Shown here piece after piece: positions 6,763 through 12,611 of a DNA stretch of 64,000 nt. The stretch spans positions 310,001-374,000 of the forward strand of contig NW_026851615.1 of NCBI RefSeq assembly GCF_026571515.1. Reading direction: 5' to 3'. Below the pieces are notes generated by a model. The model saw nothing but the letters and a program-made list of their open reading frames with translations, was not told where the DNA came from and did not search any database. The stretch is from Ruditapes philippinarum (taxonomy: Eukaryota). Made by a program: the position numbers and the translations under genes. Each line of letters begins with the position of its first letter. The stretch's first letter is position 1.

Positions 6763-6827
6763 CGCCCAATGTGGGGCCCGAACCCACGACCCCGAGATTA
6801 AGAGTCTCGTGCTCTACCGACTGCGCT
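6763..6827 (-). pseudogene. tRNA-Lys(CTT) 3' portion, split by the Dada-like insertion (5' end lies at 11350-11362)
   Basis: Matches the intact copy at 12843-12915 up to the A box. The remaining GCCCGGCTAGC and upstream spacer resume at 11350-11362. Confidence 0.93.
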
Positions 6828-8847
6828 TGAAGATCATCTTTGTCCCAGGCAAAGATACAGCTGCTTAGCCTCCGCATGAACAATCCGCTTGCCGTACCAC
6901 AGCAGTCACGGTCAACATAGATGACCTCTGGTGGTGGATGTCCTGCATCACTAAACCTCTTCATCAGACCCTGCAATGAATACCCATTTTATGTTGTTGT
7001 ATCTTTTTTCTTTTTTTTAAATATATTTGACAGTAATTGGCATATTATTTGGCATGACTTGCAAATCGTTATAGTCTTCGGACTAAATACTTACAAATCT
7101 CTAAAAGATATGTCTTTTTGAAACATCTAGGACCGAGAGCTAGAGACCTTTTATGGTATGAGGATTTTATGTTATATGCTTCAAAAATAATCAGAGCATA
7201 ACTGTAATATCATACCTTTGCCATCCTCATGAGCCCAAATCGACCTTCACCAGCAGTCAAAACTGACATCAGTACTTGGCCGTACTCATTACCCACATTG
7301 GTCGCCCATTCTGCTGTGCCCGTTGTTGGTCCTGATAATTTTTTAGTGATCTTTTTTGTTGAATCAACTTTGAGAATACGACCAAACACTGATGTTATGT
7401 TCGCCTTCACCTCTTGAAGTCTCTGCAGGACATCCTGAATGTAGACCTGCATCAGCCATCTGTATTCAGGTACACTTGCCATGACTGGTGGCTCGATAAA
7501 ATGTGGTGCCTCAACCAGCCCTGATGATGCAGCTCCTGCTACAGTCTTGCATGCTGACAGGTACTGTATGGTCTTCTGGTACCACTCTGTGCTATGTTGT
7601 TCTTGAAGCTTTTTGTGGATCTGGGATGCACTATTTCCCAAACCACATTGCCTCTTTTTCCATTCGTTCTGCTGCAGCCAACAGTTCTTGGTCATATGTG
7701 CTGGACAGAACCTCTGTAGTTGCTGAAATAGATAATAGTCATATTAAATTATACTATTAGTGTGTTTTTCATCTGAGTTATTTTCTATTAATGTTCTTAT
7801 TATAATTTTTCTATGATGAAAGTACAACAAAACAACACAAAATTTAAAAAGTTTTCTTTCCAGCACATTTCTAAATATAAAAGCAACATGTGGCTGTGAG
7901 ATCCTTGTTAACCCCTAAGCCCCTTATACTAGGATTGTCATTGAATATGGCAATATTGAAATGTCATCGATATTTACCATTCAATGCAATATCTATACAC
8001 AATATATGTACACTCACACAATTATTGAATTTTTTTCAAGACATTGCATTTTTTATAGAGATATTGGTATAAATATGTGAGGCAGATATAAACTGACTCA
8101 TTTATAAAAAGGTAAGGTATTGGATGCAATTAATAGCACTTTAGTAAAATTAAGAATGTAGTAAAAAAATACCTTGTACTTTGACAGTTGGCTTTTTCCT
8201 GTTTTCTTTTTCTGTACTGCCTCAACTCCCTCTGGGAACAGTTTTAAATAGTTCCTGAGTGCCATCTTGTTTAAATAATTTGCTGAAGATGAAGTGGGCT
8301 CTTTTTTCTGAATCAGCAGCAAGGTACGCAGCATAGCCCAATGCATTTGAGGCAAGCCACTGGAAGGTTTCACCCCTATATATAGTGTTAAAGTAACAGT
8401 TTAATAATTCAATCATATAACATATATTTATACACATTGCATTATAATAATAATAATAATCAGAGCACTAAAATATATATTTTATCTATGATAAAAAAGA
8501 TTAAAAAAAAGCTATTTCTATCTGCTATTGATAACCTTTATTAAGTTAAGACCCCATCCCCCCCCCCCCCACCCCCCAAAAAAGGAAATAGTTTCAGTTA
8601 TTCTTGCCTGAATATCCCAAACTGAATTCGGAACTGCCCCAGCAAATGTTTTTTATTCGAAACATCACCACCAACACGCCGTACAGAAACCTCGGCCTCG
8701 GCCCGCACTTTGATAGCAGACATTGGTGGCACTAGCCTGGGATGGCACATAAACACGCTGTCGCTGTTCAAGCCTAACTCTCTTGGCATTGTCTGTATCT
8801 GCCAAACTGGGGCCTGCCTGTGTCTGCTTAAATACCGGTTCCAACAT
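6828..8847 (-). pseudogene. Dada-like DDE transposase pseudogene; exons ~8848-8608, 8375-8173, 7722-7216, 6970-6828
   Basis: LLGQFRIQFGIFR|GETFQWLASNALGY (in-frame GC-AG splice); GLGNSASQIHKKLQEQH; ILKVDSTKKITKKLSG; WATNVGNEYGQVLMSVLTAGEG; MAK|GLMKRF (phase-0 GT-AG splice); PPPEVIYVDRDCCG; FMRRLSSCIFAWD. Frameshifts near 8790, 8305 and 7650. The C-terminus is lost. Confidence 0.85.
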
Positions 8848-10362
8848 CCTGAAGTAAAACCAGTCTCACTTGAAATATTATCAAATGTTTGTATTCATTA
8901 GAAAAAAAAAGAATGCCAAAAGTACTAGGGGGGAGTATATTTGGGTTAAGTTATATTGTATAGATGATATCTAATTAGTGTAGATTTAATACCAAATTTA
9001 TTGAACAAGTTGAATAAAAGCAAAGTAAGCAAGCCTCTGGCAAATTAAATTGTTAAAAATCAATAAGTTCAATAAATTTAGTATTGATTCTATACAAATA
9101 TTACATTCTATTTATCACATATCAAATATAACAATTGTTTACAGTTTATTTAAATATATTAAAATGTGACCTTTTCGAAAACCTAGCTAAACACCGTTTT
9201 CCGGTACGTTAGGGATTTAGCTCTGGGGAATTATACCAAATAAAGTACATAACACAGTTACATGACATTTCTATCATTATTTTACCGTTTAAGGTGAAAG
9301 AAATTGATAATGATTTACTTAAACGAATTACCATCATAACATATTATTATAAATTATCACGATTAAAATTAGGTTTGAAAAGTTTTGAGTACGAATCATT
9401 ACATTATTTTGCTTATTTAGTGAAAATATATCTTTAATTTTAATCATTTGGTCTACTGTTATAAAAGGAATCATTGACAAACTAATGAAAGTTTTCTTCA
9501 AGAGCTTCATTCATAATCATTGCTATTTACTTATCAAAATAACAATTTGACAACATAATTATTATCTTTATAAACAATCAATTGTAATATATTGTACTTA
9601 CCAGAGAAATGGGTATAAAACGACTAAATATTTACTTAAAAGTTTTAAATTTTAAGGCTCTATACAAGTGACAGAAATGAAGCCTTAAATAACAAAGTTC
9701 TGTAAAGAAATATGTGTTGCATAACTATAAGTTAAACATAATACATAATCTTAACCGAGTTTTATGTCACAGTCATATGGTGACTTACAGCTTAACTGGT
9801 TGAAGACATCAGGTGCCCCTATGTGCATTATTTCTGGGAACAGGCACCATAGGCATAATAGTACAGCGATTTTTTTCTCTGAATTGTGAATGGGCCCGGT
9901 ACCATAAAAATTGTAAAAAAAAGCGACATTTCTTAACAAATTGTGAACTCATGGAAGAAATCATGGTTGGCTAAACACATTTTAAGATAAACAAAGCACA
10001 ACAGGCAAAATTTACCAGCATTATTATGTCTAAACCGCCCTATTGAAGATTGTGTCTACCATGTTTAGACCCATACTAGGTAGAAAAGAGGCGAGTGAAT
10101 TGGTGTTTGTATGTGAGGAACATTGTAGGGGTGTGTGACGAACATTGTAGAACTATACATTGAACATTGTATAAGTATGCATTGGACATTGTAAAAACAG
10201 TAAATTATGCATGTGTTGCTTGTTTGTTAATATTGAAAGTTTTTATATAAAATAAATAATAAAAAATATCATCGTTAAACTTTTGTTGTTGTTTTTGTTG
10301 TAAATTTTTTTTTATTTCTTGAAAAGTGTTAACATTTTAAAGCAAAATAAATAATAAAAAAA

Positions 10363-10469
10363 TGGGGCCGGGTTGACCAGAAATAACATTGATTTGGGGC
10401 CGGGTTGACCAATTTGGGGTCGGGCTAACTTGGGGCCGGGTTGACTTGGGGCCGGGTTGACTTGTACCG
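10363..10469. repeat. Five GGGGCCGGGTTGAC-type repeats ending TTGTACCG; probable subterminal repeats of a nested DNA-transposon fragment
   Basis: Repeats seen directly in the first intron region of the Dada-like element. The matching other end was not established. Confidence 0.55.
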
Positions 10470-11199
10470 CTTAATTATACATAATAACATTATTAATGGC
10501 TTAAATAATCAAAATTGTGAAATTTCATCAGAATTGTGAACGGGTCCGTCGGACCCAGTCTGAAAATTGTGAAGGTCCTTTTGTGATTGTGAAAGGGTCC
10601 CTTATTGGGTACCACTTATATAGGGAAAAAATCGCTGTACTAGTAGAACCATAGACATTCCATGATAAGCTTGCTACATGTATATTGCTTCCTCCTATTA
10701 AGGAATCCAAACTTCTTGGTGGAAGTTGAACCTACAGCAGTTAGGGAAAATATTGGTAACAAAGTGAAGTTCATCCAAGCAATCTCCAAGAAAGAACCCA
10801 TACATGTATGTCTATTTTCCAATTATTTTCATACAATATATTAAAGAATATACTAGAAAATTGAAATATGAAATTAATCTACGGTACATATTCTATTTTT
10901 ATGGGGGTATGGGTGGTGGTCTGAAAGATACCATGGCCTTAAACTATAAATGTATTTGCTAGTATAAAACAGATCAAATTCGTTTGTCTCACTTCATCCG
11001 AATAAGTTTATCCGAAATGTATCATGGTCAGTTTTTCTTACAATCTCCGTAATATCGTAAATAATATAAACTTGGACACTATTATAGAGTGGAATCTTAC
11101 CTATTATTTCCAAAAAAAGGTTAAACACCAGCTATAAAATTAGATACGTAGAGTAAACGAAAGTAAAAATTAAAAGTCTGCTGATACTATAGTACATAT

Positions 11200-11322
11200 C
11201 CGCCATTTTCTGATTCTCGGTAATCTCTTGTTCACTGATTGGTTAATTTTCGGTAATTTTCGGTCATATTCGGTAGGGCTTAACCAATGAGATGATGGGA
11301 TTCTACCGAAAATCTACCGAAA
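11200..11322 (-). promoter_or_regulatory. Putative promoter/subterminal region of the Dada-like element (YY1-like AAAATGGCGG, inverted CCAAT boxes, TCGGTA repeats)
   Basis: CCGCCATTTT at 11200. ATTGGTTAA/TTAACCAAT inverted pair at 11238-11246 and 11280-11288. Splice donor AG|GTAAG at 11100 on the minus strand. Confidence 0.5.
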
Positions 11323-12611
11323 TTGTGTGAGTTTGATGGGTTAAATTAAGCGCTAGCCGGGCTACATGTTTATCGACAGTAGAAAAATAGAACGTAAACA
11401 GAATGGCATCTATTAATGCACAATGAAACCGCCAAAAAATCTGGCGCGGAAAAAAATTGTTAATAGATGCTTAATTCGTAATTATCTCGTATCTTGTTCA
11501 TTTAAGTACATGTATATATTTATTGCGAGAAATGTAGCAGAGAGACAAAGCCGTGTTAGTTTTGTACTGAGATTGTACGGAAAGGTGAAAAAAGAAGGTC
11601 AAATGTGGAATGGGAATAGTTCAATTGGATAACCCATTACCTCCGGACCTCCCAACACTGTACAGAACACAATGACTATATATACTGTATCGTAAAGTTA
11701 GTAGCTTTTAACCAACTTTTTAATTTACATAAATGTTCTTGTAAATTTATCTTGCAAAAAAAGTCCATGCGTCTATGATAAACCATTTTCTCTTGTGTTT
11801 ACAGATGAGAAACTGACCTCTGCTTATTTTTCCCGTCACATCGGAATCGTACACTTTCACATGGATTTTATTTATATGTTAAATCATTTCAAAAAATTAT
11901 TAATGAGCAGCTTCAATCTATTATTATTATTATTCTTTCGATTTACATAGAACGGCACAAGCGTGGAATGGCATTTCATGAATGCATACGTTCACATGGA
12001 TAATCAACTGCAAAGTAAATGGTCACTTTTACAATTGTGCCGAGCTCAATTTCATACTTTTCATGCAGTTCTATAAATATAGAATATAAATATAGACATA
12101 CAACATACAGATCTATTTGACTACGGGAATGCATGCATGCATGTATTCGTCACTGGCCGTTTTGACAGAATTAAGAATCAGCTTCTTTCTTAAGATTTAT
12201 ATATTTACCGTAAAATAACATTATTAAGTAAATACAAACAGAGGGTCCTACATGTGTATAATATATCAATTTTTTTTTAGAAAATGTGGGCATACAACCA
12301 TAGATCGATGAGAGATCTGGTACTAAATGAACAAAATAATGTGACAATTATCTATAAACATAGATCAATCTTTCATCCAGCCCATATTCTTTTTCATGTC
12401 AACGGAATCTATTGAGAAAAACAACCGGACACTTTTAGCAACGACTTTTTGTTTGATTTCCATGCTGTTTATGTACAAAGAAATAAACAAATGACATGTA
12501 TCTATAATATTATCAGCTGCGTACATATACATCGTTTTCCACATCAAATAGCTCATCCCGCTCCGTTTATCCTCATTATACACAATTTCCCGATAGGATT
12601 GACGTGTAGTC

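What the first reader, a model, noticed from the sequence alone, without database searches (positions are those of the whole stretch)
6763..11362. Dada-like DNA transposon inserted into the A box of a tRNA-Lys(CTT) gene: candidate new target specificity
Seen: a 4522-bp, TIR-less insert splits a tRNA-Lys(CTT) gene inside the A box (native TAGCTCAGTCGG), in the same orientation as the tRNA, flanked by AGCGC on both sides. It encodes a four-exon transposase with LKVDSTKK, WATNVGNEYGQVLMSVLT and YVDRDCC motifs. Known: Dada is a DDE superfamily lacking TIRs that inserts site-specifically into multicopy small-RNA genes. The targets I know of are U6, U1 and tRNA-Ala/Leu/Ile/Gly/Tyr, not tRNA-Lys. Inference: this is a tRNA-Lys-specific Dada family in a mollusc. 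This copy is dead (frameshifts, loss of the segment after DCC, loss of the C-terminus), so intact relatives should exist or have existed elsewhere.
Basis: partly seen in the sequence, partly recalled or inferred. Interest (0 to 1): 0.92.

Follow-up and report, generated by a model that had tools for sequence, protein, structure and literature searches.

The report
Dead Dada transposon splitting tRNA-Lys
A decayed copy of a Dada DNA transposon sits at that superfamily's usual spot (nucleotides 8-13, the A box) inside a lysine tRNA gene of what is probably a marine mollusc. The insertion is real and site-specific, but lysine-tRNA-targeting Dada elements were already described in fish in 2022, so this is a new member of a known kind and not a new target specificity.

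Summary
A tRNA-Lys(CTT) gene on the minus strand is split after nucleotide 13 by a 4.5-kb insert, and an intact paralogous unit 1.5 kb away serves as the empty site. The insert encodes a Dada transposase. Its exons and its full-length paralogs carry the motifs of the published Dada alignment and are closest by eye to Dada-U6_CGi of the oyster. They also match Pfam DUF6729.

In this genome, all four 5' ends that match a degenerate motif built from the family A and family B ends abut tRNA-Lys nucleotide 13. These ends belong to two families, at four different flanks. One family B element has both junctions, with a 6-bp TAGCGC duplication.

No uninterrupted tRNA-Lys reads TAGCGC, while 63 read TAGCTC. 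This is the "replaced TSD" already reported for Dada-tA and Dada-tY.

The window copy is dead. It has a frameshift, has lost the zinc-finger region, and has a 111-bp deletion that removes DxxH. It is also truncated at the 3' end inside the ORF, so its 3' AAGCGC is a deletion junction and not a clean duplication.

The claim of a new target fails. Kojima (2022) described Dada-tK, which inserts at tRNA-Lys nucleotides 8-13 in fish. What may be new is the host phylum, the TAGCGC hexamer, and ends that mimic the target. The scan noted related features on this same stretch earlier.

The parts
11356..11362 (-). tRNA-Lys(CTT) nucleotides 1-7 (GCCCGGC), the 5' remnant of the split gene
   Evidence: The upstream flank is 100% identical to the intact unit over 156 nt.
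11350..11355 (-). 5' flanking hexamer TAGCGC, at tRNA positions 8-13 where the native sequence is TAGCTC
   Evidence: The same hexamer lies at all four 5' junctions in the genome. No uninterrupted tRNA-Lys carries it.
6829..11349 (-). Body of the Dada element (family A): complete at the 5' end, truncated at the 3' end, with one nested repeat
11217..11322 (-). 5' subterminal repeats: TTTCGGTAGA twice in direct orientation (11322..11313 and 11311..11302), inverted ACCGA-type copies (11217-11275), and CCAAT-like boxes
   Evidence: Family B keeps the same layout with TTTCGATAGA.
10008..10484 (.). Nested copy of an unrelated high-copy repeat inside the element
   Evidence: dozens of 85-95% identical hits, from 4268 first-look candidates.
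8601..8789 (-). First coding block, starting at an ATG and ending in the FG..F part of the N-terminal domain
   Evidence: compared by eye with the Dada-U6_CGi row.
8101..8467 (-). Second coding block (..GETFQWL.. then ..LKLFPEG..), read in two frames, so it contains a frameshift
   Evidence: compared by eye with the Dada-U6_CGi row.
7213..7743 (-). Main exon: the end of the DUF6729 region, the first catalytic D (ILKVDSTKK) and the NEYGQVLMSVLT motif
   Evidence: Pfam DUF6729, E = 2.8e-18. 68% and 61% identical to paralogs. Same motifs as the published Dada alignment.
6829..6988 (-). Last coding block, carrying the second catalytic D (YVDRDCC). A 111-bp deletion between 6887 and 6886 removes DxxH. 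The block ends inside the ORF at ..WDKDDLQ
6823..6828 (-). 3' junction hexamer AAGCGC: ORF sequence fused to what was probably the 3' TAGCGC
6763..6822 (-). tRNA-Lys(CTT) nucleotides 14-73, the 3' remnant, with two substitutions relative to the intact copy
12843..12915 (-). Intact paralogous tRNA-Lys(CTT), which serves as the empty-site reference

Best explanation
This is a decayed copy of a Dada DNA transposon, a DDE transposase superfamily that inserts into multicopy small-RNA genes. It belongs to a tRNA-Lys-targeting kind equivalent to the Dada-tK families of fish.

The inferred mechanism is as follows. The transposase recognised the tRNA-Lys sequence around and downstream of the A box. It made staggered cuts 6 bp apart at tRNA nucleotides 7/8 and 13/14. 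It then integrated the element in the tRNA's orientation. This separated the start of the A box from the rest of the gene and silenced that copy, at little cost because at least 63 other copies exist.

The flanking hexamer reads TAGCGC and not the native TAGCTC. This is the known Dada 'replaced TSD' effect, most simply explained by the element carrying its flanking hexamers along.

Later the copy lost the zinc-finger region and 111 bp holding DxxH. It also lost everything 3' of mid-ORF, probably by a deletion between an internal AAGCTC and the 3' hexamer.

Shown here: the insertion site, the homology, the repeated use of the same site, and the decay. Inferred: the cutting chemistry, the carry-along of hexamers, and the way the 3' deletion arose.
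For: - **Empty site.** The intact paralog fixes the insertion site to the nucleotide.
- **Dada homology.** The published Dada alignment (Kojima & Jurka 2013, supplementary file 5) holds the same motif series. The Dada-U6_CGi row is about 80% identical by eye over about 55 residues around the first D. It is followed by YVDRDCC, LDIWH, and STSLE..FHLHLNRFIPG.
- **Family match.** Pfam DUF6729 scores 2.8e-18 on the window exon and 1.5e-78 on a full paralog. Protein-atlas look-alikes are eukaryotic DUF6729 clusters, with MULE and IS256 only distantly similar. This agrees with the 2013 paper.
- **Site specificity.** All four genome matches to a degenerate motif built from the family A and B 5' ends abut GCCC(G/T)GC plus TAGCGC, with zero control hits. 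They come from two element families, have four different upstream flanks, and lie in both CTT-type and intron-bearing TTT-type tRNA-Lys arrays.
- **Two-ended element.** The C1731 element has both junctions, with TAGCGC on each side of a tRNA-Lys(TTT).
- **Hexamer replacement.** No uninterrupted tRNA has TAGCGC, against 63 with TAGCTC.
- **Decay.** Comparison with the 89% identical C8160 fragment shows the 111-bp deletion, and shows the ORF continuing past the window's 3' junction.
- **Literature.** Dada-tK, nucleotides 8-13, 6-bp TSDs and TSD replacement are all described already.
Against: - This copy lacks its true 3' end, so its own duplication cannot be verified.
- It also lacks DxxH, the catalytic E and both zinc fingers. 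Those features are seen only in paralogs that are 54-68% identical.
- No tree against Repbase or fish Dada-tK sequences could be built. Relatedness to fish Dada-tK, as opposed to an independent origin of the Lys target, is therefore open.
- Only four 5' junctions and one clean 3' junction were found.
- Neither of the two clean footprint patterns searched for was found: the tRNA lacking the hexamer, and the tRNA with a doubled hexamer.
- The organism name is coded.
Confidence: 0.9

Rival explanations
1. One reading: a Dada family with a target specificity (tRNA-Lys) not known before.
For: The 2013 paper lists only U6, U1 and tRNA-Ala/Leu/Ile/Gly/Tyr as targets. No paper in the library reports a mollusc Dada in tRNA-Lys.
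Against: Kojima 2022 defines Dada-tK for tRNA-Lys, at the same nucleotides 8-13 and with the same TAGCTC target, in three fish families.
Confidence: 0.03
2. The TAGCGC hexamers are ordinary duplications of a rare tRNA-Lys variant with G at position 12 that the element prefers. On this reading the target sequence was not replaced.
For: All junctions read TAGCGC. Unrelated tRNA-derived repeats in this genome carry a native TAGCGC followed by AGTCGGTAGAGC (L046-L048).
Against: There are no uninterrupted tRNA-Lys-type genes with TAGCGC, against 63 with TAGCTC. G12 would break the 12-23 pair of the D stem. The same hexamer appears in two isoacceptor arrays. Replacement is documented for Dada-tA and Dada-tY.
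Confidence: 0.08
3. The 3' junction of the window copy was made by the transposase itself, through aberrant or one-ended transposition that used the internal AAGCTC as a pseudo-end. On this reading it was not made by a later deletion.
For: The internal site resembles the target hexamer. A short family B remnant in another tRNA-Lys (C5004) also ends at an internal TAGCGC. One-ended events are reported for Dada-tL.
Against: A 5-bp microhomology deletion explains the junction just as well and needs no special event. The copy carries other plain deletions.
Confidence: 0.2
4. The junctions are copies of one ancestral insertion, spread by duplication of tRNA arrays. On this reading they are not independent site-specific insertions.
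For: tRNA genes here lie in tandem arrays. C1731 and C5004 have near-identical upstream flanks.
Against: The upstream flanks of the four 5' junctions differ. Two element families are involved, only 68% identical in protein. Two different tRNA-Lys types are hit. The family B copies are 100% identical over 364 nt, although the upstream flanks beyond that differ.
Confidence: 0.05

Closest known systems
Dada-tK (actinopterygian fish; Kojima 2022, PMC8869645)
   Same: It targets tRNA-Lys. It inserts at tRNA nucleotides 8-13 (native TAGCTC followed by AG) with a 6-bp duplication, in the A box. The transposase is of the Dada type.
   Different: The host is a probable mollusc, not a fish. The flanking hexamer is TAGCGC on both sides, whereas the canonical hexamer listed for Dada-tK is TAGCTC. 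Phylogenetic relatedness was not tested.
Dada-U6_CGi and Dada-1_CGi (Crassostrea gigas; Kojima & Jurka 2013, PMC3706591)
   Same: The host is a mollusc. The Dada-U6_CGi row of the published alignment is the nearest match seen by eye for the N-terminal FG..TF.WL domain, the D1 block, YVDRDCC, LDIWH and the ..W..EDL.ALK.AK segment.
   Different: Dada-U6_CGi sits in U6 snRNA genes. Dada-1_CGi had no defined target. The elements here sit in tRNA-Lys.
Dada-tY_PMar, Dada-tIA_PMar and Dada-tIB_PMar (Perkinsus marinus) and fish Dada-tY
   Same: The same hexamer position (nucleotides 8-13, TAGCTC followed by AG) in tRNA genes.
   Different: They hit other tRNA species. The Perkinsus elements lack introns.
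TSD replacement in Dada-tA (to GCGCAA/TTGCGC) and Dada-tY_CaAu (TAGCTC to TGGCGG)
   Same: The flanking hexamers differ from the native target and contain a GCG core. No intact target gene has the replaced sequence.
   Different: Here only one base differs (TAGCTC to TAGCGC). That is intermediate between the tK/tY target and the TGGCGC proposed as ancestral.
[quoted passage not shown]
   Same: In family B, positions 12-23 from each end read CAC..GACTC-like. tRNA-Lys(CTT) reads GCACGAGACTCT at the same offset after the hexamer.
   Different: The 3' mimic extends into a degenerate inverted T-arm-like piece. It was seen in one family only.

Membership tests
Dada superfamily | DDE transposase with the Dada motif series: first D, second D, DxxH after the second D, and E | tested here: met
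   The window copy has D1 (ILKVDSTKK) and D2 (YVDRDCC) but has lost DxxH and E. Paralogs L038 and L040 have all four, including LDIWH and STSLESFH. The same strings occur in the published alignment.
Dada superfamily | N-terminal CCCC zinc finger | tested here: met
   It is present in the paralogs (CPHESC ... CPSC in L038) and falls within Pfam DUF6729. It is absent from the window copy. A remnant is visible in the C8160 fragment.
Dada superfamily | C-terminal CCHC zinc finger | tested here: met
   The last coding block of family B ends in CKKC ... H ... HCP followed by a basic tail, like the published rows. It is missing from the window copy because of the truncation.
Dada superfamily | No terminal inverted repeats, only short sub-terminal ones | tested here: met
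   The ends of family B share no 7-mer in inverted orientation. An imperfect sub-terminal match lies at positions 12-23. This cannot be tested on the window copy.
Dada superfamily | 6-7 bp target-site duplication | tested here: met
   The C1731 element has TAGCGC at both junctions. The window copy has TAGCGC at the 5' side and the chimeric AAGCGC at the 3' side.
Dada superfamily | Insertion at one fixed site in a multicopy small-RNA gene | tested here: met
   Four of four 5' ends lie at tRNA-Lys nucleotide 13. There is also one 184-bp remnant at the same site. The genome holds 63 intact targets.
Dada superfamily | Intron-containing transposase gene (in all but the Perkinsus elements) | tested here: met
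   The coding blocks are separated by non-coding stretches, and are collinear between C1731 and C15800 over 14-16 kb.
Dada-tK lineage (fish) | Main target is tRNA-Lys, nucleotides 8-13 | tested here: met
   compared.
Dada-tK lineage (fish) | Transposase groups with Dada-tK in a phylogeny | not testable with these tools
   No Dada-tK sequence was available by reference. The stored part of the 2022 Dataset S1 is cut before Dada-tK. Repbase is not on hand.

The most novel reading that the evidence does not exclude
These may be the first tRNA-targeting Dada families described from an invertebrate animal. They form two lineages in tRNA-Lys. One (family B) has identical copies and apparently complete coding blocks, so it was active recently. 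Both lineages carry a fixed TAGCGC hexamer and ends that mimic the target tRNA at the same offset.

Also, most other tRNA-Lys copies of this array are broken at or next to nucleotide 7/8 or 13/14, which are the outer borders of the hexamer. Taken together, this would fit a model in which the mobile unit includes its flanking hexamers and replaces the target's own hexamer. It would also support the idea that targeting of nucleotides 8-13 is ancient in Dada.
Probability: 0.4. Interest if true: 0.5.

Novelty: new member of a known kind. Interest (0 to 1): 0.35.

Why it matters
Dada is the only DNA-transposon superfamily known to have strict specificity for small-RNA genes, and how it finds its site is not understood. 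A mollusc lineage at the same tRNA position as the fish and Perkinsus families supports the idea that nucleotides 8-13 are an old, conserved target.

The TAGCGC hexamer is a further case of 'replaced TSDs', after Dada-tA, Dada-tY and possibly Dada-tV. The target-mimicking ends extend an observation made so far only for the U6 and U1 families. Both give concrete sequences for testing how the transposase recognises its ends and its target.

The window copy itself is a dead remnant and has no consequence for the host beyond one silenced tRNA gene.

Tried and rejected
- **Reads.** No read-level check of the junctions or of expression was made.
- **Spliced protein.** Exons and paralog ORFs were searched one by one, by reference.
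- **Tree.** No tree against Repbase, Dfam or fish Dada could be built, because those sequences have no reference here. The stored part of the 2022 Dataset S1 holds DNA consensus sequences and no Dada-tK entry.
- **Other paralogs.** ARAGORN and Rfam on 60 kb around the paralogs on C1731 and C15800 found no split small-RNA genes. The C1731 junctions were found only by pattern search. The target of the C15800 family remains unknown. A tRNA-like hit near it looks like a SINE.
- **False 3' junctions.** Three further matches to AGCGCAGTCGGTAGAGC are tRNA-derived repeats with a native TAGCGC, not junctions. One GCCCGGCTAGCGC hit (C5302) has an unrelated sequence after it, and two hits are expected by chance.
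- **Footprints.** Clean excision footprints were sought in two forms and not found: the tRNA lacking the hexamer, and the tRNA with a doubled hexamer. The 18-nt deletion allele exists only in this array.
- **Rest of the window.** No other Dada coding sequence lies in the window, and the DNA next to the half tRNA at 26661 matches none of the Dada loci held.
- **Literature on DUF6729.** A paper search for DUF6729 found nothing.

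
Full report
**1. The observation**

ARAGORN finds five tRNA-Glu(TTC) genes and one intact tRNA-Lys(CTT) (12843-12915, minus strand) in the window. On the minus strand, the region of the finding reads as follows:
- upstream flank, then GCCCGGC (11362..11356)
- TAGCGC (11355..11350)
- the insert (11349..6829)
- AAGCGC (6828..6823)
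- AGTCGGTAGAGC... to the end of the tRNA (6822..6763)

Both halves, with their flanks, align to the intact unit (alignment A1). BLAST gives 156/156 identity on the 5' side and 92% over 209 nt on the 3' side. The intact unit reads TAGCTC at tRNA nucleotides 8-13. The split is therefore real, its site is fixed to the nucleotide, and it lies inside the A box (nucleotides 8-19). The coding sense of the insert is the same as that of the tRNA.

**2. What the insert encodes**

Stop-to-stop reading of the minus strand gives four coding blocks:
- 8789..8601
- 8467..8101, read in two frames
- 7743..7213
- 6988..6829

The main block matches Pfam DUF6729 (E = 2.8e-18).

A protein search of the window's own genome found about 30 related stretches. 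Several have long open frames. One is a 496-aa ORF within a 542-aa open frame on contig C1731, and another is a 514-aa ORF on C15800. These carry a Cys4 finger, LK(M/I)DSTKK, YVDRDCC, LDIWHFMRR (a DxxH motif) and RCARGSTSLESFH. They match DUF6729 at about 1e-78.

The protein alignment published with the paper that defined Dada (Kojima & Jurka 2013, supplementary file 5) contains exactly this motif series. The row of the oyster element Dada-U6_CGi is about 80% identical by eye to the window exon over some 55 residues around the first catalytic D. It also shares the N-terminal FG..TF.WL domain and the segment after DxxH.

Protein-atlas look-alikes are eukaryotic DUF6729 clusters, with Mutator, MULE and IS256 families far behind. 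This agrees with the distant relationships stated in the 2013 paper. I conclude that the protein is a Dada transposase.

Each was used by reference on its own.

**3. Target specificity**

A DNA search with the 5' end found one other copy, on C10635. It again lies directly after GCCCTGC TAGCGC, in an array of intron-bearing tRNA-Lys(TTT) genes with a paralogous upstream flank. It is truncated after about 95 bp.

Pattern searches then found a related element on C1731 with both junctions:
- 5' side: GCCCGGC TAGCGC, followed by an end homologous to the window's.
- 3' side: TAGCGC followed by AGTCGGTAGAGCATCAGACTTTTA, that is, nucleotide 14 onwards of an intron-bearing tRNA-Lys(TTT).

A second copy of this family (family B) sits at the end of contig C15353. 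It is 100% identical over 364 nt, but beyond that its upstream flank differs.

I built a degenerate pattern from the first 22 nt of the family A and B ends and anchored it 13 nt upstream. It has four matches in 1.4 Gb and none for the reversed control. All four abut tRNA-Lys nucleotide 13.

A 184-bp remnant of the family B 3' region lies in yet another tRNA-Lys(TTT) at the same place, with irregular junctions.

The genome holds 63 exact copies of the uninterrupted tRNA-Lys 5' half with TAGCTC and none with TAGCGC. The hexamer next to the elements is therefore not the native target sequence.

**4. Anatomy of the ends**

The first 50 nt of families A and B are homologous. Both carry two direct copies of TTTCG(G/A)TAGA at positions 28-48 and several inverted copies further in, together with CCAAT-like boxes. 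In family A this motif equals the tRNA D-loop sequence TCGGTAGA that follows the insertion site.

Family B shows no terminal inverted repeat. However, the reverse complement of its 3' end reads GCACGAGACTCT at positions 11-22 and TCGTGGGTTCGAG at positions 56-68. tRNA-Lys(CTT) has the first string at exactly the same offset after the hexamer, and has the second in its T arm. The 5' ends of both families have a weaker CA...ACTC match at the same offset.

This is the kind of sub-terminal repeat shared with the target that was described for Dada-U6 and Dada-U1.

**5. State of the window copy**

The nearest relative is an 89% identical fragment on C8160, itself broken by stops. Comparison with it and with the paralogs shows the following defects in the window copy:
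- a frameshift in the second block
- no recognisable WWYPP or Cys4 region
- a 111-bp in-frame deletion between 6887 and 6886 that removes LDVWH, the DxxH motif
- an end at ..WDKDDLQ, where C8160 continues with ..ALKTAKR.. and the published Dada-U6_CGi row continues likewise

At that point C8160 reads CAAGCTC. The window's AAGCGC is therefore ORF sequence fused to the flank. The most likely cause is a deletion between this internal near-copy of the hexamer and the true 3' TAGCGC. Use of the internal site by the transposase cannot be excluded.

The catalytic E and the C-terminal CCHC finger are gone from the window copy. Family B retains them, and its coding blocks are collinear with those of the C15800 family over 14-16 kb.

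A copy of an unrelated high-copy repeat is nested at 10008-10484.

**6. Comparison with what is known**

The 2013 paper lists U6, U1 and tRNA-Ala/Leu/Ile/Gly/Tyr as targets. It reports 6-7 bp TSDs, no TIRs, and the replacement of the TSD in Dada-tA.

The 2022 survey by Kojima (PMC8869645) added Dada-tK for tRNA-Lys, among others. It states that Dada-tY, -tK, -tN, -tR and -tS all insert at nucleotides 8-13, with TAGCTC as the target of -tK and -tY. It also reports that Dada-tY often replaces TAGCTC by TGGCGG, and it proposes TGGCGC or TTGCGC as the ancestral target.

The site, the TSD length, the lack of TIRs and the hexamer replacement seen here are therefore all known properties, and the Lys target is not new.

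That survey covered vertebrates only. The only non-vertebrate tRNA-targeting families in these two papers are from the protist Perkinsus. I found no paper reporting a mollusc Dada in tRNA-Lys. Repbase could not be consulted.

**7. The host**

Run and organism names are coded. The stretch is held by runs from at least nine studies of 'organism A', by a marine sediment metagenome, and by an RNA-seq run labelled mollusc metagenome. A marine mollusc is plausible but not proven here. I worked beside these places afterwards.

**8. Side observation followed in part**

Another note of this scan (s1-803770) says that most tRNA-Lys copies of this array are broken. I confirm this:
- One copy ends at nucleotide 7 and continues 62 nt downstream of the gene (junction 5485/5484).
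- Two copies (about 14480 and 25050) lack 18 nt that can be placed at nucleotides 8-25.
- One copy starts exactly at nucleotide 14 (26661).

Every breakpoint lies on an outer border of the Dada hexamer, while the tRNA-Glu genes are intact. This fits a model in which breaks are made outside the hexamers, which would also explain the carried-along TAGCGC. However, the clean footprints that this model predicts were not found genome-wide, and the 18-nt allele is confined to this array. It remains an idea.

**9. Verdict**

The claim of a new target specificity is refuted by the literature. This is a new member of a known kind, of moderate interest for its host phylum, the TAGCGC hexamer and the target-mimicking ends.

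Noticed in passing
window 5478-5491, 14474-14489, 25045-25060, 26650-26665: Four more tRNA-Lys copies of the array are broken on an outer border of the Dada hexamer. One joins nucleotide 7 to DNA 62 nt downstream of the gene. Two share an 18-nt deletion that can be placed at nucleotides 8-25. One begins exactly at nucleotide 14. All tRNA-Glu genes are intact. These may be scars of Dada activity.
   Followed up: partly
window 10008-10484: A copy of an unrelated, very abundant repeat (thousands of first-look candidates, 85-95% identical copies) is nested inside the Dada element.
   Followed up: no
L045 530-610 (G000:C1731:232730-232810): The 3' end of the family B element is an inverted, degenerate copy of the tRNA-Lys(CTT) anticodon-arm and T-arm sequence. 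It starts at the same offset from the hexamer as in the target, so element end and flanking tRNA form a palindrome around TAGCGC.
   Followed up: partly
L053 1480-1680 (G000:C5004:215980-216180): A 184-bp remnant of the family B 3' region sits inside another intron-bearing tRNA-Lys(TTT) at the same site. Both junctions are hybrid (TAGCT+GCGC on the left, TAGCGC+TC on the right), and the remnant ends at an internal TAGCGC of the element.
   Followed up: partly
G000:C1731:197626-232801 (L044, L033, L038, L039, L045): The family B element spans 35 kb between its junctions. Its coding blocks lie at 208.3-224.6 kb and carry all the Dada motifs. Its 5' 346 nt are identical to a second copy on C15353, which suggests recent activity. 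The stretch 198.6-207.5 kb was not read.
   Followed up: partly
G000:C9810:30600-37300 (L006, L007, L009, L018-L022): About nine matches to the Dada exon lie in tandem within 7 kb, all on the same strand. Some are open (414 and 505 aa) and some are broken. Their target and structure were not examined.
   Followed up: no
L046, L047, L048: tRNA-derived repeats, likely SINE heads, carry a native TAGCGC followed by AGTCGGTAGAGCCGCGG. This shows that the hexamer plus D-loop string exists elsewhere in the genome without any Dada.
   Followed up: no
L037 6714-6807 (G000:C10635): The tRNA-Lys(TTT) genes of this genome carry an intron of about 20 nt after the anticodon. ARAGORN in bacterial mode reports them as an undetermined tRNA.
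   Followed up: no
Pfam PF20499 (DUF6729): This 'domain of unknown function' covers the WWYPP/Cys4-finger region of Dada transposases up to just before the first catalytic D. No paper in the library mentions it, so the link to Dada seems not to be recorded in the literature.
   Followed up: partly
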